A model generated the notes under the pieces. The model was not told the DNA's origin, searched no databases, and worked only from the letters and a program-made list of their open reading frames with translations. From sequence record LR756500.1: DNA of 64,000 nucleotides; one strand, given 5' to 3'. The position numbers and the translations under genes are program-made. Below, one piece after another: positions 18,101 to 40,755 of this stretch; position 1 is the stretch's first letter; the number at the start of each line of letters is the position of its first letter.

Positions 18101-21100
18101 CTATTTATCTTTTAAAAATTTTTCTAATAAATCTAACATTTCTTCAATTGACCAATTTTTATTTATAAATTTATAACTTCCGTCTTCAGTATCTTCAAAT
18201 GCAGGATAAATATAATACTTATGAATAACTGACACATGATCTTTAGGCTGTATATTAACGCAATAACCTGTATCTTTACAAAGAGCTTCAATTTTTTTAT
18301 CTAGTTCTTTACATTTTTTTCGGCTTTCGGCTTTTTGCCAAAAATTTATAAATGGAATATATTTACCTTCTTCCCATAAAGGATAAGTAATAAAATTTTC
18401 AGATATAAATGGAATTAATTTTTCAATTTGTTTATGTATTTTATTTTGTGCATTTGAATTTTTAATTAAATCATCTTTAATTTCACCTAAATCTTCAAAT
18501 ATATGATTAGGTAAATTTGAATAATTATTTTTTAAATATTCAATTACACTAATTAAATTTGTTCTTTCATTTTTCATTTCATTTTTCATTTAAAAAGTTA
18601 TCATAAATTTCTAAATATTTTTCACTAACACCTTCTATACTATACGGCAAAAAACTTTTATCATATTTTTTCCAATGATTCCAATATTTTTTAACTTGTT
18701 CTTCTAATTTAATATCTTTATCATTAACTTTTCTATGTAAAGACGTGAAAATTATTCCTGACATATCATCAGCGTGAACAATCCCAATAGTATTAAAATA
18801 TTTATGTAAATTACTTTCTTTATTCCATAATCCCTAATTATTTCTAATAGCTGTTCCAAAACCATGATGAATAGTTGAAATAGCATCTGTTTCATTGTTT
18901 TCAGCAAATCTTTTTAATTCAGTTATATCTGTATTTTTTATTAAAGCGNNNNNNNNNNNNNNNNNNNNNNNNNGTTTAATTTCTTTCATAATATGTTCTT
19001 TAATTTTTCATTTCGTATACAGTTTATATTATCACATTGATGTTTTCCTGGTCTAACTAAAGTTAATTTTTCTCCACAATCTCCACATGCATAAATTAAT
19101 TCTAGTTCTGAATCAGCATTAATTATCGTAATTTCTTTTAATAAGTTTTTATTTCTTTGTAAATCTTCTTCTAATCTTTTAATATATGTAGTCATCCTAT
19201 CAATTATATAATTAATTAGTAAATTATCATTTATTAAATTTTTATCAGATGTTGGATATGCAAAATGAAATTTATTACTATATTTATTGATATAGTAATA
19301 AATTTCATTTGAGCATTTTATAATTTTAGTTCCACCGTCTCTTATAGTATCGATAAAGGTTACACTAAAAAATTTACCACCTTTTATTACATATTTTTTA
19401 ATTAATTCTTCTTCCATAATTATCTATCTACTTCTATTATAGCATCCGGATGTTCTATACATGCATTTAAATATTTTTCAATCCATGGAACGAAATGAAT
19501 ATATAATCCCCATCCATTAGATGCATTAAATTGTTCATAAAATTCAGGTCTAGTTTTCATATCTTCTAAACCATTAGTAAGAGGTTCTATTAATTCGCTA
19601 GCTTTGGTTATATTAATTTCTTCAGGCCTCCATAAATGATAATATATTCCAGCCTCAGCTGCCATTTTTCCTAAATTATGTGTAATGTTTTGACCAAAAT
19701 ATATTTCATAATCTTCATATACACTATGACAATGATCACATTCTTTTTTAACTTTTTCTTTACTCTTTAAACTTACATCTAAACTCATAAAATATTTTTA
19801 ATTATACAATAATTCAGTAAGATTATATTCTAATTTATTTCTTTTTTCTAAATCTTTAATAGCTTGTTCAAATCTTTCAGCTGTTAATTCTTTTAAAGAT
19901 GAAATCATAAACCTTTGTGTTATAGTAGTAAATACTTCATAACTACCATCGTTATATTTTCTTATATTGATTCCATCTTTAATATACTCTGTTATTTCTT
20001 CATTCATTATTTGTCCTTTCTTTTTCTTTCTTTTTTTTGTATTGTTCAAATTGTAATGCATCAAATAAATATTCAACACCAAACCATCCGTATAAATCTC
20101 TTAATTTATAATTAAATTTATGAAACTTTAATATTTCATCAATAGTTAATTCAGGTAAATCTCTTTCAATACATCCTTTAAATGAATCAAATCTTGATTT
20201 AAAAGATTCATATTCTCCAACTCCTGATATTAAATATCCATCTCTAGTTTTTCTTATTAAATTTACAAAATCTTCTAAAGACTCTAAATTATCAAAATAT
20301 TTATTATCCATATTAATATGTTATTTTTCCTAAATTAATTAACTCATCTAAAATATTATCTAAGTATAAATCTAAATGTTCTTTAATTCGTTCTTTTAAA
20401 TAAAAATTTTGTTCTTCAAGATTTGCATTATTCCAATTATCTTCATTTACATCTACTTTTATTATTAGTTCATTAAATTTAACTTTTATTTTAAGTTCTT
20501 TTTCCATTTTTTAAATAAGTTTTTTGATATTTTCGTAATTTAATTTTAGATTTAGTACCATCTGCATTAATAACTAAGCAATATTTTTCTATAAAATATA
20601 CAATATTAGATTTACATTTTTCAAATTCTGTCATTATATTATTATTAAAGGTATATTTTCATTTAATTTTGATGCGTCATATCCTATATTAGTTGAATCA
20701 TTACCAGTTACACATTTTATAGGTCTTTCATGAAATAAATACACTGATTTAACTGCAGCTGCTATTAAAAAATATTCTCGCTCAGATAATGTTTCTTTTA
20801 AATTTATAAAATCTGTATTAATCATTAATTGATAATTTTTATCAGATTTAATATCGTAACCTATTAAAATGCAATGATGTAATTTACCTTTATATTTATT
20901 AAACCATTCATCATAAGATAATGAATTTTCCAATAGATATTTTTTAGCAATATCTGCATTATATTTTTTCATTTCTTCTAATGTAATTCCTTTTATGTAA
21001 AATTTACCAACTCCATCAAATGAATATTCTAAACCACCATTCCATATAACTTCATAAAATACTTCATCTTTATTATGTCCTATTGTTCCATATATTTTAT

Positions 21101-24518: not shown

Positions 24519-24544
24519 AATTTTACTGTTTTTATTTTACATAC

Positions 24545-24666
24545 TTATAACAACAAATATAAAACATTGCTGATGTAGTTTCTATTTATATTATACGTTT
24601 AATTTCAAGTTTTGTTTCATTTATTTACATTCATGTTGCAACTTTTTATATTTGTAATCGTTATAG
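24545..24666 (+). repeat. attC-like site C2
   Basis: TTATAAC-aa-CAAATATAAAA...TTTTATATTTG-taatc-GTTATAG; the right 60 bp are 56/60 identical to 33957-34016 (inverted). Confidence 0.85.
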
Positions 24667-24675
24667 ATAATAAAA

Positions 24676-24894
24676 TTAAAAATAGTCATGACTATCTATA
24701 AATAACTCCTTATATGTTTCATCAGTAAAAGAAAATCCTCTACCATCAACCGTCATTTCTACAACTTGCATCACTTTTAAGTAATTAATTATTGTGTCAA
24801 GTTCGTCTTCTAATTCTTTACCTATTTTAAACATACTCATAGCTGCCATTATCTCACCAAGTCTTTCAATATTTTCTTTTACTTTCTCATCCAT
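24676..24894 (-). CDS. cassette 3 ORF, hypothetical
   Basis: Flanked by GTTATAGATA and TATCTATAAC, 10/10. Confidence 0.7.
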   Translation of the reverse strand: MDEKVKENIERLGEIMAAMSMFKIGKELEDELDTIINYLKVMQVVEMTVDGRGFSFTDETYKELFIDSHDYF

Positions 24895-24922
24895 ATTAAT
24901 TAGTATTTTTAATTTTACATAT

Positions 24923-25007
24923 CTATAACAACAAATATAAGAAATAAATCTTACTTTGTCTATTTTTTAATGAAAAGATTTACTTCTCATATTTGCAACC
25001 GTTAGGC
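24923..25007 (+). repeat. attC-like site C3
   Basis: CTATAAC-aa-CAAATAT..AAATCTT..AAGATTT..ATATTTG-caacc-GTTAGGC. Confidence 0.85.
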
Positions 25008-25011
25008 ATAA

Positions 25012-25203
25012 TTATACTCTACCACTAAGGTAGTATTCTATTTCACTCTTACTAAAATCATCGGGCTTGTTTTTATAGTACTCCCTTAATTTTCCTTCGT
25101 GAACACCTTGTTCAAATGCCCATTTCATATCATCTAATGAATAACTACGCCTAACAAAGTATAAACGTAATGTTTTCAGTTTTTCAATCAATCTTTTTAT
25201 CAT
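25012..25203 (-). CDS. cassette 4 ORF, hypothetical; start codon lies inside attC C4
   Basis: Cores GTTAGGCATA and TACGCCTAAC (9/10); peptide LRLYFVRRS is encoded by the attC arm. Confidence 0.7.
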   Translation of the reverse strand: MIKRLIEKLKTLRLYFVRRSYSLDDMKWAFEQGVHEGKLREYYKNKPDDFSKSEIEYYLSGRV

Positions 25204-26637: not shown

Positions 26638-26731
26638 CCATAACAAGGTGTATAAAACATAACCTAATTACAAATTTTAAATTAACCACGGAACTATAAT
26701 AGGTTATGTTTCATACACCTAACCGTTAGCG
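26638..26731 (+). repeat. attC-like site C8
   Basis: CCATAAC-a-AGGTGTATAAAACATAACCTA...TAGGTTATGTTTCATACACCT-aacc-GTTAGCG. Confidence 0.9.
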
Positions 26732-26948
26732 GTAATTTAATAACAGTATTTTGAGCATCTTCATAGCTTTCAAATATCTTATTACATCTTGGACAAGAAC
26801 AACAACCGTCAACAACGGGTATAGCAAATAATTTTACTAAGTCAAATCGTAATTTTCCACATATTTCTCCTGTCATTTTTATATAATCAAGATTATCGTT
26901 ATCAATTTTTACATCACTTAATAATAAGTGTACTTCTTGTTCTGTCAT
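26694..26948 (-). CDS. cassette ORF, hypothetical; starts inside C9 and reads through into C8
   Basis: LFAIPVVDG is encoded by the attC arm; cores GTTAGCGGT and ACCGTCAAC (7/9). Confidence 0.55.
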   Translation of the reverse strand: MTEQEVHLLLSDVKIDNDNLDYIKMTGEICGKLRFDLVKLFAIPVVDGCCSCPRCNKIFESYEDAQNTVIKLPLTVRCMKHNLL

Positions 26949-27021: not shown

Positions 27022-27156
27022 TTATTTTTTGGATATTTTATATAACATTATAAATCCTATTAAAAAGTGATGGATGTTGTACAATTTGCCATTTCTATCA
27101 ACTTCGCTACAAAAATATCCAAATCCTATTACAAATGGCAAAATCTTTATATTCAT
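27022..27156 (-). CDS. cassette ORF, 44 aa
   Basis: Small ORF between C9 and C10. Confidence 0.45.
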   Translation of the reverse strand: MNIKILPFVIGFGYFCSEVDRNGKLYNIHHFLIGFIMLYKISKK

Positions 27157-27168
27157 AATTTTTACAGT

Positions 27169-27298
27169 TTATAACAACAAATATAAGCAATTATTTTCAT
27201 TACTTCCAAAATAAATGTTGTTTGTTAATATTAATTTTGTTCTTTTAATTAAGTTTCTACTAATTTTACTCAAATGTATATACCTGCAGACGTTAGCT
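27169..27298 (+). repeat. attC-like site C10
   Basis: TTATAAC-aa-CAAATATAAG ... TATATACCTGCAGAC-GTTAGCT. Confidence 0.7.
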
Positions 27299-30039: not shown

Positions 30040-30133
30040 ATATTTATTAAATAAAATTTTATTATTAAATTATATAACCAAAATTAATTATGTTTATAAT
30101 TTAATCAATTTTTATATTTTTAATTTTACATAC

Positions 30134-30167
30134 TTATAACAACTATTTTTACACTTAATCGTTAGTA
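30134..30167 (+). repeat. orphan collapsed attC-like remnant
   Basis: TTTTACATACTTATAAC (same context as C2) ... taatc-GTTAGTA. Confidence 0.45.
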
Positions 30168-30226: not shown

Positions 30227-30658
30227 TTAAATAAAATCATATTTCATAATTATCTTATTATCGATTTCTTTAACAACAGTCCATCCCATTTTTAAATGAT
30301 ATTCTTTTGCAAAAACTGTATCTAAAAATATAGTTTTATATCCTAATAATTTTGCATATTCAAATCTTTTTTCAGTTAACATCAATCCATATCCATTACC
30401 TCTATATTCTGGTTCAACCCATAACAATAAATTCCAGGGAGATATAGTCCTATCTATTTCATTAATAGTATCAAATAATCCACAACCTATAGGTTTATCA
30501 TCTATTATCAATACATAACAAACTGAATCAGATTCATTATTTAAATACCTTCTAATCTCACTTAAACTATATTCATCATCAACTTGCCAACGTTCTTTCA
30601 TAATAGATGAAACATAATTAATATACATGTGAGTTAATTTTTCTATTTTAATTTCCAT
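30227..30658 (-). CDS. GNAT-family N-acetyltransferase
   Basis: LWVEPEYRGNGYG acetyl-CoA motif; YHLKMGW. Confidence 0.85.
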   Translation of the reverse strand: MEIKIEKLTHMYINYVSSIMKERWQVDDEYSLSEIRRYLNNESDSVCYVLIIDDKPIGCGLFDTINEIDRTISPWNLLLWVEPEYRGNGYGLMLTEKRFEYAKLLGYKTIFLDTVFAKEYHLKMGWTVVKEIDNKIIMKYDFI

Positions 30659-32079
30659 TCAAATTTATAATTGCCTGTTCCAAAACATCTATANNNNNNN
30701 NNNNNNNNNNNNNNNNNNNNNNNNNNNNNNNNNNNNNNNNNNNNNNNNNNNNNNNNNNNNNNNNNNNNNNNNNNNNNNNNNNNNNNNNNNNNNNNNNNNN
30801 NNNNNNNNNNNNNNNNNNNNNNNNNNNNNNNNNNNNNNNNNNNNNNNNNNNNNNNNNNNNNNNNNNNNNNNNNNNNNNNNNNNNNNNNNNNNNNNNNNNN
30901 NNNNNNNNNNNNNNNNNNNNNNNNNNNNNNNNNNNNNNNNNNNNNNNNNNNNNNGGCTCCACCAACAACCGAAGTATTTAATTTATTAGCAAACCGTAAA
31001 AGCTCCCATTCATTTTCTTTAGCAACTTGATTTAAATTTTTACGTAAGGATCCGAAGGTCATTAATGATACTAACTCACCTTCATAATATAAACCTAATT
31101 TAATAGCAGCATTAGTATTGCCCTGTAAATGGTTCCTATTTAAAAATTCTCTACTATCACCAGAATTAACGGTTTTAATTACACATTTTCTAGCATACAC
31201 TTTATCAGTAGATAAATTTAATAAATTCTTTATTCTTGATTTTACTATATCTCTTTTGTTATACCAAACATCTTCCCATATATGTATTAAATTAATTCCC
31301 AATTCTTTGCATCTATTACTTTTATCTATATGATATTCTTTAGGTTTATTAAATTCATTATGCCAATATACTCCATTATGTTCAAATGCTATATTTTTAT
31401 CTTCAATATAAATATCAAGTTCTCTATTTTTTAATTCTTTTTTAGAATTAATTCTAAATGGTTTTAAATAAATGTCTTTTATCCAATCTATTAATTCTAT
31501 TTCAGAATTACTTTTTCCGTGATTAGGATTACATTTTAAACATGGATTAATATTTATATTTATTCTTCTATATAATAATTGAGAATCTATTATTGATATA
31601 CTTTTACATTCAACACATTCTATTTTTATTTTTTGTTGATCATCCCATTCTATTATTTTAATTTTATCTTTTAATTTTTCTTTAGCAAAAGGAAAATAAT
31701 ATTTATCTTTAAAATAATTTGATTGTGTTATATGTTGTACTCCATATCTTTTTAGAACTGTTATTCTTGTTCTTTTTTCTTTTAAAACTATTGCACATTT
31801 TCTACTACAGCTAGAAGAATAACCAGGCATTATACCCATAAATTTAGATGAAGGTATTTTATTACCACATACTTCACATTTTGGAATTTCAGTTTTATCA
31901 TGTAATGCATGATAAAGTTTTTCTTTAAAAGACGTTAATTTTAGATTATTATTTATAGAATATTTTTCTATTTCTAATAATAGATTAGGATAATTATTTT
32001 TAAAAAATTCAATTCTAGTAGTACTAGATGTAAGTTTTCCGTTTTTTATTAATATTTTATTTAAATCATTTGATAACAT
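30643..32079 (-). CDS. Hef-like homing endonuclease (Zn ribbons, Vsr/PD-(D/E)xK-like nuclease, GNAT-like C-terminus); contains an N gap at 30694-30954
   Basis: ELDIYIEDKNIAFEHNGVYWH, LIHIWEDVW, ARKC..FLNRNHLQG, WELLRFA. Confidence 0.7.
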   Translation of the reverse strand: MLSNDLNKILIKNGKLTSSTTRIEFFKNNYPNLLLEIEKYSINNNLKLTSFKEKLYHALHDKTEIPKCEVCGNKIPSSKFMGIMPGYSSSCSRKCAIVLKEKRTRITVLKRYGVQHITQSNYFKDKYYFPFAKEKLKDKIKIIEWDDQQKIKIECVECKSISIIDSQLLYRRINININPCLKCNPNHGKSNSEIELIDWIKDIYLKPFRINSKKELKNRELDIYIEDKNIAFEHNGVYWHNEFNKPKEYHIDKSNRCKELGINLIHIWEDVWYNKRDIVKSRIKNLLNLSTDKVYARKCVIKTVNSGDSREFLNRNHLQGNTNAAIKLGLYYEGELVSLMTFGSLRKNLNQVAKENEWELLRFANKLNTSVVGGAXXXXXXXXXXXXXXXXXXXXXXXXXXXXXXXXXXXXXXXXXXXXXXXXXXXXXXXXXXXXXXXXXXXXXXXXXXXXXXXXXXXXXXXYRCFGTGNYKFEWKLK

Positions 32080-33905: not shown

Positions 33906-33952
33906 ATGGTCAATTAGTAGAAATTCCACGCTACGACCCTCTTTATTATTGT

Positions 33953-34067
33953 GGCTAACGGTTGCAAATATAAAACGTTGCAACATGAATGTAATTAAAT
34001 GAAACAAAACTTGAAAAAATGCTCGAATAACCACGGATGCCCAACTGTTTTATACCATATGTTAGCG
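33953..34067 (-). repeat. attC-like site D3
   Basis: GGCTAAC..TATAAAAC...GTTTTATA..GTTAGCG; body shared with C2. Confidence 0.85.
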
Positions 34068-34103
34068 GTAGTGATTTTTTAACTTATTAATATTTAACGA
34101 TTT

Positions 34104-34991
34104 ATGAAAACAAAAAGATTTGATAGTTCAGAAGGTAATGTTTGGAAATATGTATTTGACTTTGAAAATGCAGTTGCCGAAGCGGTACTTTACAAATATG
34201 AAAACTTTTACAAAAGGACTGTACTTTGCGTGAGTGTGCAAAGTGGATGCCCTGTTGGTTGCAAATTTTGCGGAACTGGCAAAAAGTTTATTAGAAACCT
34301 TACAAACTTAGAAATAGTTGCACAGGTTAAACATTGCTTAAAAGACATGAATATTGAAAATGTTAATTCGGCTAGTGATCGTTTCCAAATAATGTTTATG
34401 AGTATGGGTGAACCTACTTTAAATATTGATAATGTAATAACGGCAATAAAGGATTTAAACAACTTATATCCAAATGCTGAATTACTTATTTCAACTATGG
34501 GGGCAAAAAACAATACCGCTTTTGAAAAACTGTTAAAAGTAAGTATTGAAATACAAAAGGTTGGTTTGCAATTTTCAGTACATGAAGCATTTGAAGAAAA
34601 AAGAAACCAATTAATATCATTTAAAAATAAATTGAATTTACGTGAAATGCGTGATTTTGGCATTGAGTGGAATAGGCAAACAAAACGCCCTGTATATGTG
34701 AATTATTGCATTGGAGAAACAAACCAAAGCAATGAAGAGATGGATAGGCTTAAAGACTTATTTAGCCCTGCTCTTTTCAATTTTACATTTTCGGTTATTT
34801 GCTCTTCTGATGAAAACATGAAAGATAAAGGATATAGAGAACTGAACAAGATAAACACAATTACTTCATCATTTGTTGAATGTGGTTATAATGTTCGAGT
34901 TTTCGACCCTGCTGGTCAAGATGATATTGGGGGCGGGTGCGGACAATTATGGTATGTACAAAACTGGATGCGTGACCATCATTACCGCTAA
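34104..34991 (+). CDS. RlmN/Cfr-family radical SAM methyltransferase carried as a gene cassette
   Basis: LCVSVQSGCPVGCKFC, FMSMGEP, DIGGGCGQL; cores GTTAGCGGTA and TACCGCTAAC, 10/10. Confidence 0.85.
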   Translation: MKTKRFDSSEGNVWKYVFDFENAVAEAVLYKYENFYKRTVLCVSVQSGCPVGCKFCGTGKKFIRNLTNLEIVAQVKHCLKDMNIENVNSASDRFQIMFMSMGEPTLNIDNVITAIKDLNNLYPNAELLISTMGAKNNTAFEKLLKVSIEIQKVGLQFSVHEAFEEKRNQLISFKNKLNLREMRDFGIEWNRQTKRPVYVNYCIGETNQSNEEMDRLKDLFSPALFNFTFSVICSSDENMKDKGYRELNKINTITSSFVECGYNVRVFDPAGQDDIGGGCGQLWYVQNWMRDHHYR

Positions 34992-35085
34992 CATAAATAT
35001 ATAAATAATAATATATAATTAATTAAATATGAATGCCTTAGGACAATCAATGTTAATAAAATTTAAAAAATATTTAATGTTGAAA
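34987..35085 (-). repeat. 99-bp element, copy 2 (attI-like site at the end of array 2)
   Basis: 97/99 identical to the reverse complement of 23722-23820; contains TATAAATA facing the LRR gene. Confidence 0.85.
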
Positions 35086-35108: not shown

Positions 35109-35759
35109 ATGGAATATAACGATAAAAATGGATTAGAATTAATAGCTGAATTAGCTAAAGTTAGTACTGATAAGCTAATGAATTTAACTATTTTAATACT
35201 AAGTAGTAATAAATTGACTTCTATACCAAAAGAGATAGGATTACTTACTAATTTAAGAGAATTACGTTTATCCAATAATGAATTAACATCTGTACCAAAA
35301 GAGATAGGAAATTTGGTAAATTTACAACATTTACATTTAAATAGTAATAAATTAACTTCTATACCATTAGAAATATTTAATCTTATAAAATTAACTAAAT
35401 TATTATTATATAGTAATAAATTGACTTCTATACCAAAAGAGATAGGAAATTTAATAAATTTACAGCGTTTATTTTTAAGTTATAATGCATTGACTTCATT
35501 ACCTAAAGAGATAGGAAATTTGGTAAATTTATGTGAATTACTATATACAAATACTAAGATGGTTTCAATACCTATTGAGTTAGTTAAGTTAAATGTTTTT
35601 CCAAAGTTAGATTTATCAGAATTAACTCTGCCGTTATGGGCTGAATTATTTCAAGAAGATAAATTTAAAGTTATTAAGCATAAAGATTTTCCAAAAGATT
35701 TAAGAAATCATCCATGGTTTATTGATGTAGCTTATGCAGATGATTTTGGACTTATTTAA
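35109..35759 (+). CDS. leucine-rich repeat protein
   Basis: About six 23-aa repeats LTSIPKEIGNLxNLxxLxLxxN, with DNA-level repeats TTGACTTCTATACCAAAAGAGATAGGA. Confidence 0.9.
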   Translation: MEYNDKNGLELIAELAKVSTDKLMNLTILILSSNKLTSIPKEIGLLTNLRELRLSNNELTSVPKEIGNLVNLQHLHLNSNKLTSIPLEIFNLIKLTKLLLYSNKLTSIPKEIGNLINLQRLFLSYNALTSLPKEIGNLVNLCELLYTNTKMVSIPIELVKLNVFPKLDLSELTLPLWAELFQEDKFKVIKHKDFPKDLRNHPWFIDVAYADDFGLI

Positions 35760-36309: not shown

Positions 36310-37458
36310 TTATTCTATATTTGGATAATTAAAAAGTTTATTTTGATAGTTTTTAAGAATAAGATTTCCATTTTCATCTTTACCTTGATAGTATTCAGGA
36401 AGAATAGGAATTTTACCTCCTCCACCTGGAGCATCAATTACAAAGGTAGGTATAGCATAGCCTGAAGTATTACCTCTAAGATTAAACATTATTTCTATTC
36501 CTTTTTCGATTGAGGTTCTAAAATGTTCTGAACCTAGAATTGGATCACATTGATATAAATAGTACGGTCTAACTCTAACTTTAAGTAATTCATGAAATAA
36601 TTTTTTAAGAATTAATGAGTCATCATTAATTCCTTTAAGTAATACCGTTTGAGATCCTAATGGAATTCCAGCATTTGCTAATAAGTTGCAAGCTTGTTTT
36701 ACTTCAGGAGTAATTTCATCTGGATGAGTAAAATGTATACTCATAAAAAGAGGATGATATTTTTGTAGAATATTTATTAGTTTTTTGTTTATTCTTTGTG
36801 GAAGTATAACTGGAACTTTGGTTCCAATTCTTATTATTTCAATATGTTTGATATTTCTAATAGTTGATAATAAATAATCAAGTTGTGAATCAGGTAAAGT
36901 TAATGGATCACCGCCAGAAATTATTACATCTCTTATTTCAGTATGTTCTCGCAAATAATTAAAAGCAGATTCCCAATTATTTAAATTTTTTTCTTTTGCT
37001 ACAATATGAGAACGTGTACAATATCTACAATATGTTGCACAAAAATCTGTTGCTAAAAATAAAACTCTATCTGGATATCGATGTATAATATTAGGTACCG
37101 GATTATCTTCATTTTCATTTAATGGATCTGATAATTCACCCTCATTTATATAATATTCATTTACAATCGGAATAACGCTTTTTCTTAATGATTGCAATGA
37201 ATTATTTTTATCTATTAAGCTAGAATAATAAGGTGTTATTCTTATAGGTAATGAATCTTTATTATTATCATTTATAGATTTTTCATTATCATTTAAATTA
37301 AAAAAATCATTTAATTGTTTAATGTTTGTAATACTATTTTTTATTTGCCATCGCCAGTCATTCCACTGTTCTTTTGATGTATTAGGAAAATTTTCTTTTA
37401 AATATTCTATTGATTTTTCACTAGGTTCTATAAGTGAGATATCATCATTTTTGTCCAT
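36310..37458 (-). CDS. kamA: lysine 2,3-aminomutase (KamA-family radical SAM/PLP enzyme)
   Basis: WNDWRWQ, HRYPDRVL, CATYCRYC, SGGDPL, PYYLYQCD, DAPGGGGK (PLP Lys). Confidence 0.9.
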   Translation of the reverse strand: MDKNDDISLIEPSEKSIEYLKENFPNTSKEQWNDWRWQIKNSITNIKQLNDFFNLNDNEKSINDNNKDSLPIRITPYYSSLIDKNNSLQSLRKSVIPIVNEYYINEGELSDPLNENEDNPVPNIIHRYPDRVLFLATDFCATYCRYCTRSHIVAKEKNLNNWESAFNYLREHTEIRDVIISGGDPLTLPDSQLDYLLSTIRNIKHIEIIRIGTKVPVILPQRINKKLINILQKYHPLFMSIHFTHPDEITPEVKQACNLLANAGIPLGSQTVLLKGINDDSLILKKLFHELLKVRVRPYYLYQCDPILGSEHFRTSIEKGIEIMFNLRGNTSGYAIPTFVIDAPGGGGKIPILPEYYQGKDENGNLILKNYQNKLFNYPNIE

Positions 37459-40158: not shown

Positions 40159-40755
40159 ATGTTAGCAATAGCTCCACCTAATAAAAAAGAGATTATAAAC
40201 TATTCTAATTGGTTAGAAAAAAGAAAAATACCTTTTCATATACTTAATGAATATGATAATATAAATAGTTATTCTATGCTTATGTTATGTGGAGGTCCTG
40301 ATATAGGAAAAAATAAATTAAGAGATGAATTAGAAATAAAATGGTTTAATGATGCTTATAGAAAAATTCCTGTAATTGGAATTTGTAGAGGATTACAATT
40401 AGTTAATATTATTCTTAATGGTACTCTTTATGAAGATTTATCTGATGAATTAATAATGCATTCGACTGATAAAAATTCTATTTCTAATGAACCTTCTTCA
40501 AATTTAAATTCAAGTTTTCATAATATTATATACAATAATTTTAAAATTGAAGTTAATTCTAGACATCATCAGGGAATTAAAGTATTAGGTGAAGGATTAA
40601 AACCTTTAGCATATAGTGAAGGAGATAATTTAATAGAAATGATTAAAGGATTTAAATCTTTATTTGTACAATGGCACCCTGAAAGAGAAGAAGTATATGA
40701 AATGCCAGCAGAAAGAATCGTATCATTGTGGATAGAAAAGTTTATGTTACTTTAA
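40159..40755 (+). CDS. class I glutamine amidotransferase-like / peptidase C26
   Basis: LCGGPD, GICRGLQ, NSRHHQG, QWHPE. Confidence 0.88.
   Translation: MLAIAPPNKKEIINYSNWLEKRKIPFHILNEYDNINSYSMLMLCGGPDIGKNKLRDELEIKWFNDAYRKIPVIGICRGLQLVNIILNGTLYEDLSDELIMHSTDKNSISNEPSSNLNSSFHNIIYNNFKIEVNSRHHQGIKVLGEGLKPLAYSEGDNLIEMIKGFKSLFVQWHPEREEVYEMPAERIVSLWIEKFMLL

What the first reader, a model, noticed from the sequence alone, without database searches (positions are those of the whole stretch)
34061..34992. RlmN/Cfr-family methyltransferase as the most recently inserted cassette
Seen: a 295-aa radical SAM protein with CxxxCxxC, the upstream conserved Cys (LCVS), MGEP and the C-terminal methyl-carrier Cys (GCGQL). 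It is bounded by a perfect 10-bp GTTAGCGGTA/TACCGCTAAC pair, with its stop codon inside the core. Known: RlmN methylates C2 of A2503 and tRNA A37, and Cfr methylates C8 of A2503 and confers multi-antibiotic resistance. Inference: a mobile RNA (or other) methyltransferase on a phage cassette. The substrate is unknown, and no resistance claim can be made from the sequence alone.
Basis: partly seen in the sequence, partly recalled or inferred. Interest (0 to 1): 0.7.

Follow-up and report, generated by a model that had tools for sequence, protein, structure and literature searches.

The report
Phage RlmN-like methylase lacking RNA-docking domain
A huge phage carries an intact, horizontally acquired radical-SAM methyltransferase that is related to the RNA methylases RlmN and Cfr but belongs to a separate, virus-borne branch without their RNA-docking domain, and whose relatives sit next to phage NAD+-rebuilding genes, so its target is probably not the ribosomal site that gives antibiotic resistance.

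Summary
ORF 34104-34991 (+) encodes a 295-aa radical-SAM protein with CxxxCxxC and both catalytic cysteines of the RlmN/Cfr mechanism. The flanking inverted repeat is real and longer than reported: 13 bp perfect, 18 bp with one G·U.

The protein is not an RlmN or Cfr orthologue.
- It scores far below every RlmN and Cfr equivalog cut-off.
- It lacks the HhH2 N-terminal RNA-docking domain.
- It has replaced the stem-binding and ribose-contacting residues.
- It falls in a separate clade of about 280-320-aa proteins, mostly on viral contigs.

The window is part of the uncultured huge phage LR756500.1. The gene looks imported. Its GC3 is 4 SD above the genome mean. About 90% nucleotide identity to unrelated phage contigs covers only the ORF, or the ORF plus a 42-87-nt leader. 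The repeat arms lie at or near the module ends in three contexts. They are not a recurrent integron-type site.

In relatives the gene repeatedly lies directly beside NAPRTase-family NAD+-reconstitution genes, and once it is fused to a Nudix domain. That link is absent locally in this phage.

My reading is an RlmN-type C-methylase with a changed, unknown substrate and a likely counter-defence accessory role. No resistance claim is warranted.

The parts
34104..34991 (+). ORF of 295 aa: radical-SAM methylase of the RlmN/Cfr superfamily, from a short viral clade without the N-terminal HhH2 domain
34058..34075 (+). Left arm of the inverted repeat, inside the 5' leader and 29-46 nt upstream of the ATG
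   Evidence: The arm is also present in the leaders of L030 and L118.
34978..34995 (+). Right arm of the inverted repeat. It covers the last four codons, the stop codon and 4 nt beyond.
   Evidence: The coding part, CATCATTACCGCTAA, is shared by relatives L018, L022, L030, L112 and L118.
34017..34103 (+). 87-nt leader that travels with the ORF in some phages
   Evidence: About 90% nucleotide identity to L030 begins at 34017. Identity to L118 begins at 34062.
34017..34992 (+). Imported module (leader plus ORF) shared with the otherwise unrelated phage contig L030
   Evidence: The ORF's GC3 is 0.264 against a genome mean of 0.102 ± 0.040.
33946..34016 (+). Local 71-nt intergenic repeat that abuts the imported module, with a sharp junction at 34016/34017
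   Evidence: It is 89% complementary to 24603-24673 and is not shared with L030.
24603..24673 (-). Second copy of the 71-nt intergenic repeat, lying just after the stop of ORF 24676-24894 (-)
24982..25016 (-). Partial third copy of the intergenic repeat (its CTAACGGTTGCAAATAT head)
26725..26736 (-). Third copy of the arm 12-mer (ATTACCGCTAAC on the - strand), at the 3' end of the unrelated ORF 26694-26948 (-). It is followed by GGTT, as in the repeat head.

Best explanation
Enzyme (shown). The gene encodes an intact class-A radical-SAM methyltransferase that uses RlmN/Cfr chemistry. In that chemistry a [4Fe-4S] cluster sits on C49/C53/C56. A methyl group is first placed on C279. 5'-deoxyadenosyl radical turns it into a Cys-CH2 radical, which adds to an electron-poor aromatic carbon. 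C42 then resolves the adduct. The protein belongs to a distinct clade found mostly on viral contigs. This clade keeps the beta-sheet extension, the barrel and the C-terminal methyl-Cys loop. It has lost the HhH2 domain and the basic residues with which RlmN and Cfr dock onto L-shaped RNA. It lines the substrate pocket with its own invariant residues.

Substrate (inferred). It therefore most likely C-methylates an adenine-type ring in a substrate other than the A2503 junction or whole tRNA. That substrate could be a small RNA loop or an adenine nucleotide.

Role (inferred from relatives, not shown for this phage). Relatives repeatedly sit directly beside, or are fused into, phage NAD+-reconstitution operons, and they also lie near ADP-ribose-processing and RNA-repair genes. 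The likeliest role is a counter-defence or host-takeover accessory tied to NAD+/ADP-ribose metabolism.

Origin (shown). The phage acquired the gene horizontally as a module of about 0.93-0.98 kb made of a leader plus the ORF.

Repeat (predicted only). The 15-18-nt terminal inverted repeat would clamp the 5' leader to the stop-codon region in the mRNA.
For: Superfamily membership:
- NCBIfam RlmN and Cfr models score E 1e-32 to 1e-19.
- Solved Cfr and RlmN chains score E 2.5e-16 and 2.5e-15.
- The AF2 model has pLDDT 95.3.
- In Foldseek the first eleven hits are all RlmN-family or Cfr chains (E 3e-18 to 9e-14), and the next radical-SAM enzyme scores 3e-7.
- The cluster cysteines (C49/C53/C56) are invariant and the two mechanistic cysteines (C42/C279) are conserved in at least 90% of 58 family members.

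Distinct clade:
- The tree separates the short proteins from the nested RlmN+Cfr clade by several branches with at least 95% support.
- There is no match to the N-terminal domain, and alignments begin at about RlmN residue 88.
- Mapping the Cfr-RNA contacts from PMC13001441 gives these replacements, each conserved in at least 12 of the 14 short-family sequences compared: R184/R185 to A125/E126, S103 to V40, S153 to M97, R327 to F267.

Viral distribution:
- 442 IMG/VR contigs encode a relative.
- The nearest ESM-Atlas clusters are 67-100% Viruses.
- Copies labelled bacterial lie in a prophage or a phage-like contig.

NAD+ link:
- Core NAD+-synthesis genes lie in the flank of 15 of 63 dereplicated loci.
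- The NAPRTase-family gene is within about 510 nt in 8 of 13 loci and within 2.6 kb in all 13.
- The partners include NARP1-type (Prs-like plus Nampt-like), NARP2-type (Nampt plus NMNAT-Nudix) and PncB/NrtR-type sets (pathway definitions from 10.1101/2024.02.11.579819).
- The adjacency is scattered over the family tree, with at least 8 changes forced.
- P0125 is an RlmN-like-Nudix fusion followed by NadV and NMNAT.
- 7 of 10 further large records, and this phage itself, carry an NAPRTase gene elsewhere.

Horizontal transfer.

Predicted RNA clamp.
Against: - In this phage the gene is not next to NAD+ genes. The NAPRTase gene is about 97 kb away and the NMNAT-like gene about 87 kb away.
- Within the query's own subclade (at least 57% identity) only L118 shows the link.
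- No background rate was measured for how often any accessory gene of large phages lies near NAD+ genes, and large phages often carry such genes.
- Every characterised member of the superfamily acts on RNA. Some basic residues near the pocket are kept (R38, R167, R195, R265). Proteobacterial-phage members keep an RlmN-like C-terminal tail.
- tRNA or tmRNA genes lie within 10 kb in 28 of 60 loci, and RNA-repair-type genes in 10 of 63.
- A slow enzyme that consumes two SAM per turnover is ill suited to bulk metabolite conversion.
- The complex prediction with a neighbouring NadV gave no answer.
- No activity was measured.
Confidence: 0.45

Rival explanations
1. It is a working RlmN analogue. It is a minimal m2A methyltransferase that modifies A37 of phage and/or host tRNAs, or a small RNA hairpin. 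Its purpose would be to tune decoding or to protect tRNA from anticodon nucleases, independently of NAD+ metabolism.
For: - The closest characterised relatives are RlmN and Cfr.
- Both catalytic cysteines are kept.
- tRNA or tmRNA genes lie within 10 kb in 28 of 60 loci, nearly always on the same strand.
- In Stenotrophomonas phage ANB28 the gene sits inside a tRNA cluster.
- Rnl1, RtcB or metallophosphoesterase genes are nearby in 10 of 63 loci.
- This phage encodes 26 tRNAs and a tmRNA.
- Some members carry an RlmN-like C-terminal tail.
Against: - The HhH2 domain that reads the L-shape is absent.
- The anticodon-stem/H90-binding arginines and the ribose contacts are replaced.
- tRNA distances are spread roughly evenly over ±10 kb, so the link is regional and not operonic, whereas NAPRTase genes are directly adjacent.
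- In this phage the tRNA cluster is more than 110 kb away. Only tRNA-Asp and tRNA-Glu, out of the five species that are RlmN substrates in E. coli, have A37.
- Many members are acidic, with pI about 5.
Confidence: 0.3
2. It is a Cfr-like enzyme that makes m8A2503 in 23S rRNA and would give multi-drug (PhLOPSA) resistance.
For: There is distant homology to Cfr (E 6.7e-25 to NF000424; 9p0p E 2.5e-16). The methyl-Cys machinery is shared.
Against: - It scores 84-88 bits against cut-offs of 530-550.
- It lies outside the well-supported Cfr clade.
- It has no N-terminal domain, which in Cfr anchors the H90/H91/H92 junction.
- The Cfr residues W101, S103, S151, S153, R184, R185, R327 and F330 are all replaced.
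- Its setting is lytic-phage accessory regions, not resistance plasmids.
Confidence: 0.03
3. It C-methylates adenine in phage DNA or in a deoxynucleotide precursor, as a new DNA hypermodification against restriction.
For: - The residues that contact the 2'-OH and 3'-O in Cfr are replaced by V40 and M97.
- RNA-shape recognition has been lost.
- A distant member is fused to an HD/dNTPase-like domain.
- Some loci have neighbours such as ThyX, Dam, an N6/N4 methylase and a dGTP-diphosphohydrolase-like gene.
Against: - There is no precedent for this chemistry on DNA.
- The DNA-metabolism neighbours are not recurrent in the cluster analysis.
- A stoichiometrically costly, slow enzyme is unlikely to modify a 460-kb genome.
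Confidence: 0.07
4. It is an integron-like gene cassette, with GTTAGC/GCTAAC as a recombination core used by a site-specific recombinase.
For: - The repeat arms lie at or near the ends of the shared module. L118 shares 34062-34994 and L030 shares up to 34992.
- The stop codon lies inside the right arm.
- A (C)TAAC|G(G)TTG junction recurs at the head of intergenic repeats in the window, L030 and L112.
Against: - GTTAGCG does not fit GTTRRRY.
- No compact attC follows the ORF.
- The motif does not recur in the genome beyond three local copies.
- Four contexts (L018, L022, L026, L112) have the gene without a left arm.
- No integrase was sought or seen nearby.
Confidence: 0.05

Closest known systems
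RlmN (dual-specificity 23S rRNA m2A2503 / tRNA m2A37 radical-SAM methyltransferase; TIGR00048, PDB 3RFA, 5HR7)
   Same: - The fold matches (Foldseek E about 1e-18, TM 0.8).
- The CxxxCxxC motif and both mechanistic cysteines (C118/C355 correspond to C42/C279) are present.
- The GEP SAM motif, the beta-sheet extension and the C-terminal methyl-Cys loop are present.
   Different: - There is no HhH2 N-terminal domain of about 85 aa.
- It scores 105 bits against a cut-off of 290.
- It falls in a separate clade.
- R206/R207 are replaced by A/E, T116 by V and R344 by F.
- It is encoded by viruses and linked to NAD+ salvage genes, not housekeeping genes.
Cfr (23S rRNA m8A2503 methyltransferase, antibiotic resistance; NF000424, PDB 9P0P, cryo-EM complex in PMC13001441)
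   Same: It shares the same superfamily, mechanism residues and core fold.
   Different: - It lies outside the Cfr clade.
- It scores 88 bits against a cut-off of 530.
- It lacks the N-terminal domain that anchors the H90-H92 junction.
- It lacks the Cfr-specific contacts W101, S103, S151, S153, R327 and F330.
- There is no basis for a resistance phenotype.
Phage NAD+ reconstitution pathways NARP1 (Adps + Namat) and NARP2 (Nampt + Nmnat) (10.1101/2024.02.11.579819; PMC13464706)
   Same: Relatives of this gene lie directly beside, or are fused into, these operons in many independent phage lineages.
   Different: The described pathways need no radical-SAM enzyme, and these papers do not mention one. 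In this phage the gene is not adjacent to the NAD+ genes.
Mobile promoter/stem-loop cassettes of T4-type phages (PeSL elements; from my own knowledge of Arbiol et al. 2010, not checked here)
   Same: A single accessory ORF with its own leader has been exchanged between unrelated phage genomes. It is bordered by short repeated intergenic elements.
   Different: The repeat family here has only 2-3 copies in the genome. Promoter function was not shown, and circular intermediates were not tested.

Membership tests
RlmN/Cfr superfamily (class A radical-SAM methylases) | Radical-SAM CxxxCxxC cluster motif | tested here: met
   C49/C53/C56 are invariant in the 58-sequence alignment.
RlmN/Cfr superfamily (class A radical-SAM methylases) | Two mechanistic cysteines: a methyl carrier in the C-terminal loop and a resolving Cys before the cluster motif | tested here: met
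   C279 aligns with RlmN C355 and Cfr C338. C42 aligns with RlmN C118 and Cfr C105.
RlmN/Cfr superfamily (class A radical-SAM methylases) | Core fold: beta-sheet extension, partial TIM barrel and C-terminal loop | tested here: met
   The AF2 model has pLDDT 95.3. The first eleven Foldseek hits are RlmN-family or Cfr chains, with an 11-order E-value gap between the top RlmN-family hit and the next family.
RlmN (orthologue) | Score at or above the equivalog cut-off | tested here: not met
   TIGR00048 scores 105 against 290, NF008396 scores 79 against 633, and PRK14464 scores 113 against 422.
RlmN (orthologue) | N-terminal HhH2 RNA-docking domain (RlmN_N) | tested here: not met
   There is no Pfam match beyond Radical_SAM. 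Alignments start at RlmN residues 75-113, depending on the search.
RlmN (orthologue) | Placement inside the RlmN clade | tested here: not met
   It is separated from the RlmN+Cfr clade by several branches with at least 95% support. The tree is unrooted.
RlmN (orthologue) | m2A formation at A2503 or A37 | not testable with these tools
   This needs biochemistry.
Cfr (resistance methyltransferase) | Score at or above the Cfr model cut-off, and clade membership | tested here: not met
   NF000424 scores 88 against 530 and TIGR04432 scores 84 against 550. The protein lies outside the 99%-supported Cfr clade.
Cfr (resistance methyltransferase) | Residues that bind A2503, U2504, H90 and the H91 junction | tested here: not met
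   W101, S103, S151, S153, R184, R185, S187, R327 and F330 are all replaced, and the N-terminal domain is absent.
Cfr (resistance methyltransferase) | C8 methylation and the PhLOPSA phenotype | not testable with these tools
   This needs an experiment.
Integron gene cassette | A compact attC downstream of the ORF with GTTRRRY / RYYYAAC cores, recurring between cassettes | tested here: not met
   The arms are 912 nt apart and flank the ORF. GTTAGCG does not fit the core. The motif is not enriched genome-wide.
Integron gene cassette | An associated integron integrase | not tested
   Not searched for.
NARP-linked accessory gene | Operon-level adjacency to NAPRTase-family, NMNAT or Prs-like genes | tested here: inconclusive
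   The feature is met in 15 of 63 dereplicated relatives and in L118, which is 93% identical. It is not met in this window, where the NAD+ genes lie about 87-97 kb away.

The most novel reading that the evidence does not exclude
The short viral clade is the first RlmN/Cfr-type radical-SAM methylase with a non-RNA substrate. It would C-methylate the adenine (or pyridine) ring of an NAD+/ADP-ribose-derived nucleotide, for example an immune signal such as a cyclic ADPR isomer, or NAD+ itself. It would act as an unrecognised third component of phage NAD+-reconstitution counter-defence.
Probability: 0.2. Interest if true: 0.9.

Novelty: new variant of a known kind. Interest (0 to 1): 0.58.

Why it matters
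RlmN and Cfr are the only characterised enzymes that use the methyl-cysteine radical mechanism, and both act on one RNA architecture. This work points to a large, well-conserved clade found mostly on viral contigs: 442 IMG/VR contigs, and thousands of predicted proteins. The clade keeps the chemistry but has discarded the RNA-docking parts, so the mechanism may have been redirected to a new substrate.

The repeated, independent, operon-level association with NARP1-, NARP2- and PncB-type NAD+ genes has apparently not been described. It includes a Nudix fusion. It gives a concrete, testable lead for a new anti-defence activity.

Automatic annotation calls these proteins '23S rRNA (adenine2503-C2)-methyltransferase' or links them to Cfr. 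That naming is not justified and could be misread as a resistance determinant in viromes.

Tried and rejected
- Literature searches for phage-encoded RlmN/Cfr-like or radical-SAM partners of NadV/NARP found nothing relevant. The NARP papers do not mention such an enzyme. The library is limited, so absence is weak evidence.
- PHROGs gave only a weak hit to an unknown-function family. PADLOC gave nothing. Rfam found nothing in the leader or ORF. No sigma-70-type promoter or intrinsic terminator stands out.
- A predicted complex of the RlmN-like protein with the adjacent NadV-like protein of L059 returned no verdict. It counts neither for nor against binding.
- I first judged the inverted repeat to be a private feature of this genome, because L018, L022, L026, L004 and L006 lack it. 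I revised this when L030 and L118 proved to share the leader and its left arm.
- Isoelectric point was not discriminating as a proxy for RNA binding.
- tRNA proximity is regional only.
- Position 37 of the phage's own tRNAs was neutral evidence.
- The Schwalm et al. 2016 paper on the RlmN-tRNA structure could not be fetched. The comparison with tRNA binding therefore rests on the Cfr cryo-EM preprint.
- The two masked N stretches in the window (18949-18973 and 30694-30954) were left unread and unfilled.
Full report
**1. What is at the coordinates**

The window is 100% identical to part of LR756500.1, an uncultured 462-kb phage. It lies at 176865-240864 of a 429-kb IMG/VR record. The genome has 24% GC.

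ORF 34104-34991 (+) encodes 295 aa.
- LCVS, with C42.
- CPVGCKFC, with C49/C53/C56.
- SMGEP.
- GGGCGQL, with C279.

The 10-bp pair GTTAGCGGTA / TACCGCTAAC lies at 34061-34070 and 34983-34992, and the stop codon is inside the right arm. The repeat is longer than reported. It is 13 bp perfect and 18 bp with a single mismatch (34058-34075 / 34978-34995).

Flanking 10-bp repeats are frequent in this AT-rich genome: 47 of 462 ORFs have one. Nearly all are A/T-only, and only two contain 4 G/C. The 12-mer ATTACCGCTAAC has three copies (two exact, one with one mismatch) within 8.3 kb, and no exact copy appeared in shuffles. At two mismatches the genome-wide count equals chance. The repeat is real, but it is local and not a genome-wide core.

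**2. What the protein is**

Pfam sees only the generic Radical_SAM domain, just above its cut-off (30.2 against 29.5 bits).

NCBIfam finds RlmN and Cfr models at E 1e-32 to 1e-19, but far below every equivalog cut-off:

| Model | Score (bits) | Cut-off (bits) |
|---|---|---|
| TIGR00048 (RlmN) | 105 | 290 |
| NF000424 (Cfr) | 88 | 530 |

Solved Cfr (9P0P) and RlmN (3RF9) chains match at E 2.5e-16 and 2.5e-15. The alignments start at about RlmN residue 86-113.

An AlphaFold2 model built on 58 homologues is confident (pLDDT 95.3). In Foldseek its first eleven hits are all RlmN-family or Cfr chains (E 3e-18 to 9e-14, TM about 0.8). The next radical-SAM enzyme scores 3e-7. Superfamily membership and the methyl-cysteine mechanism residues are therefore well supported.

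Orthology to RlmN or Cfr is not supported. Three lines of evidence argue against it.

First, the tree. It had 118 sequences: close homologues, 50%-cluster representatives, cultured-phage homologues, three RlmN and three Cfr. Full-length RlmN and Cfr form a nested clade. The query and all cultured-phage homologues lie in a separate group of 280-320-aa proteins, across several branches with at least 95% support.

Second, the domain structure. The alignment shows that the whole family lacks the N-terminal domain of about 85 residues. In the Cfr-rRNA cryo-EM structure this HhH2 domain anchors the H90/H91/H92 junction and reads RNA shape. The tRNA bound to RlmN overlays that L-shaped RNA (PMC13001441).

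Third, the substrate contacts. Mapping the published Cfr contacts onto the family gives the following:
- The stem-binding R184/R185 (RlmN R206/R207) become A125/E126.
- The ribose contacts S103 and S153 become V40 and M97.
- R327 (RlmN R344) becomes F267.
- F330 becomes A270.
- The family has its own invariant pocket residues: Y30, Y32, Q95, Q156, R195, T228, S230 and R265.

**3. Distribution**

The word-indexed search found more than 5,500 relatives. The 120 best hits listed are mostly 290-300 aa and 61-97% identical. The exhaustive search found 71 cluster representatives at E of 1e-30 or lower.

IMG/VR holds 442 viral contigs with a relative, and many are 100-425 kb. Cultured phages with homologues at 44-51% identity include:
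- Xanthomonas phage JGB6.
- Stenotrophomonas phages ANB28 and BUCTxx99.
- Salmonella phage Arash.
- Aeromonas phage Ahp1.
- Several Vibrio phages.

The copies labelled bacterial that I inspected lie in an SPbeta-like prophage of Paenibacillus sophorae and in a phage-like 120-kb contig. The nearest ESM-Atlas clusters are 67-100% Viruses.

I found no paper describing this clade.

**4. Genomic context of relatives**

I called ORFs in 63 loci, dereplicated at 90% identity of the anchor protein. I clustered the neighbours and annotated the recurrent clusters.

The top recurrent neighbour is a NAPRTase-family gene (NadV/Nampt/Namat type). It is present in 13 loci. It lies within about 510 nt in 8 of them and within 2.6 kb in all 13. 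Other recurrent neighbours are:

| Neighbour | Loci |
|---|---|
| NMNAT or NadM-Nudix | 9-10 |
| Prs-like | 6 |
| Macro | 5 |
| NADAR | 6 |
| T4 Rnl1 | 4 |
| RtcB | 3 |
| Metallophosphoesterase | 3 |

By the definitions of Osterman et al., the partner sets correspond to NARP1 (Prs-like Adps plus Nampt-like Namat) and NARP2 (Nampt plus Nmnat).

Two loci strengthen the link:
- L118 encodes a protein 93% identical to the query. Its gene order is NrtR regulator, RlmN-like, an unknown gene, NMNAT, Nudix, PncB.
- P0125 is an RlmN-like-Nudix fusion followed by overlapping NadV and NMNAT genes.

On the family tree the NAD+-linked loci are not clustered. The tree needs 16 changes, and at least 8 are forced by well-supported branches. 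The adjacency has therefore arisen or been lost many times.

tRNA and tmRNA genes behave differently. They occur within 10 kb in 28 of 60 loci, but at roughly uniform distances. That is a regional association and not an operonic one.

Seven of ten further large records carry an NAPRTase gene elsewhere. So does this phage, at G000:307744-308319, with an NMNAT-like gene at 298322-298726. These lie about 87-97 kb from the gene.

I did not measure a background rate for random accessory genes, so the size of the enrichment is not established.

**5. Local context and origin in this phage**

The gene's local neighbours are:
- A GT2 glycosyltransferase.
- A GNAT acetyltransferase.
- A homing-endonuclease-like gene, which contains a masked N stretch that I left unread.
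- A leucine-rich-repeat protein.
- A lysine-2,3-aminomutase-like radical-SAM gene.

No NAD+ genes, tRNA genes or RNA-repair genes lie nearby.

The gene is compositionally foreign. Its GC3 is 0.264 against a genome mean of 0.102 ± 0.040, which puts it in the 98.7th percentile of 311 ORFs.

Nucleotide identity to other phage contigs is confined to the gene. Those contigs have entirely different neighbouring genes.

| Contig | Identity | Window range shared |
|---|---|---|
| L018, L022, L112 | about 90% | 34101-34991/2 (ORF only) |
| L026 | 82% | ORF |
| L030 | 90% | 34017-34992 |
| L118 | 88% | 34062-34994 |

Immediately upstream, 33946-34016 is a local 71-nt repeat. A second copy lies at 24603-24673 (-) and a partial copy at 24982-25016 (-). 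The junction with the imported segment at 34016/34017 is sharp.

The right arm's coding part (…HHYR-stop) is shared by L018, L022, L030, L112 and L118. The left arm is present only where the leader is shared, that is in the window, L030 and L118. In L118 the shared segment begins and ends at the arms.

A junction of the form (C)TAAC|G(G)TTG recurs in several places:
- At the head of the local repeats.
- At 26725, at the end of an unrelated ORF.
- Beside the gene in L030 and L112.

My conclusion is that the gene moves between phages as a small module, with or without its leader. Its ends coincide with short repeats. This is not an integron-type cassette system. The core does not fit GTTRRRY, there is no compact attC, and there is no genome-wide recurrence.

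If the module is transcribed as one RNA, the arms are predicted to pair with probability about 1.0. The helix is 18 bp at -26 kcal/mol in the window and 15 bp at -22 kcal/mol in L030. It would enclose the whole ORF and bury the stop codon. No covariation is available to test whether pairing is under selection, and Rfam finds no known RNA family.

**6. Mechanism and function**

Shown:
- An intact RlmN/Cfr-type catalytic apparatus.
- Loss of the RNA-docking domain and of the basic stem contacts.
- A distinct conserved pocket.
- A distribution mostly on viral contigs.
- Horizontal transfer.
- Repeated tight linkage to NAD+-reconstitution genes in relatives.

Inferred:
- The enzyme performs methyl-Cys radical C-methylation on an adenine-type ring in a substrate that is not the L-shaped RNA of RlmN/Cfr.
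- It acts as a counter-defence or takeover accessory tied to NAD+/ADP-ribose metabolism. I put this reading at about 0.45.

Rivals:
- The main rival, at about 0.3, is a minimal RlmN analogue that acts on tRNA A37 or a small RNA. It is supported by precedent, by regional tRNA and RNA-repair neighbours, and by retained basic residues and an RlmN-like C-terminal tail in some members.
- Cfr-like resistance is unlikely, at about 0.03.
- DNA or deoxynucleotide modification is possible but unsupported, at about 0.07.

**7. Verdict**

This is a new variant of a known kind: an uncharacterised viral clade of RlmN/Cfr-type methylases without the N-terminal domain.

The finding is moderately interesting in itself. 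It becomes more interesting because of the NAD+-operon link and the Nudix fusion, which make a non-RNA substrate a testable possibility.

Noticed in passing
window 36310-37458 (-): A second radical-SAM gene lies 1.3 kb downstream, on the opposite strand. It is lysine-2,3-aminomutase-like (LAM_C plus Radical_SAM; KamA/EpmB type). No PHROG matches it.
   Followed up: partly
window 35109-35759 (+): A 216-aa leucine-rich-repeat protein lies directly downstream of the methylase. Its DNA shows a 69-nt periodic direct repeat (35171-35584).
   Followed up: partly
window 30643-32079 (-), with N run 30694-30954; second N run 18949-18973: A homing-endonuclease-like ORF (PHROG 3339/559) is interrupted by a masked stretch of N. 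A second short N run lies at 18949-18973.
   Followed up: no
window 24526-24567, 24904-24945, 27150-27191, 30115-30156: A conserved motif of about 42 nt (…TTTTACATAC/TTATAACAACAAATATAA…) recurs upstream of small minus-strand ORFs. It may be a phage promoter or regulatory box.
   Followed up: no
G000:C1:324156-381549 (outside the window): The phage encodes 26 tRNAs and a tmRNA in one minus-strand region. They include a tRNA with anticodon CUA, which ARAGORN calls 'tRNA-Pyl'. The same kind of suppressor-like tRNA appears in related loci L059, L090 and L102. This hints at TAG recoding in part of these phages.
   Followed up: no
G000:C1:307744-308319 (-) and 298322-298726 (-) (outside the window): This phage carries its own NAPRTase-family gene and an NMNAT-like gene, about 87-97 kb from the methylase. 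It therefore has NAD+ salvage capacity, although the genes are not adjacent.
   Followed up: partly
L110:2043-3449 and L111:724-3003: There are natural fusions of the short RlmN-like domain. One is fused to a Nudix domain and is followed by NadV and NMNAT. A more distant one is fused to an HD/HD_assoc (dNTPase-like) domain.
   Followed up: partly
L004:6577-7785 (Paenibacillus sophorae prophage): A Gad2-family (anti-Gabija) gene lies two genes upstream of the RlmN-like gene in an SPbeta-like prophage. This is another anti-defence neighbour.
   Followed up: no
L033:1898-2506, also L061 and L091: TnpB/Cas12f-like (TNB domain) ORFs lie within a few kb of the gene in three loci. Three such ORFs also exist in the window's own genome.
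   Followed up: no
window 40159-40755 (+): A peptidase C26 / class-I glutamine amidotransferase-like gene (gamma-glutamyl hydrolase type) lies in the same accessory region.
   Followed up: no
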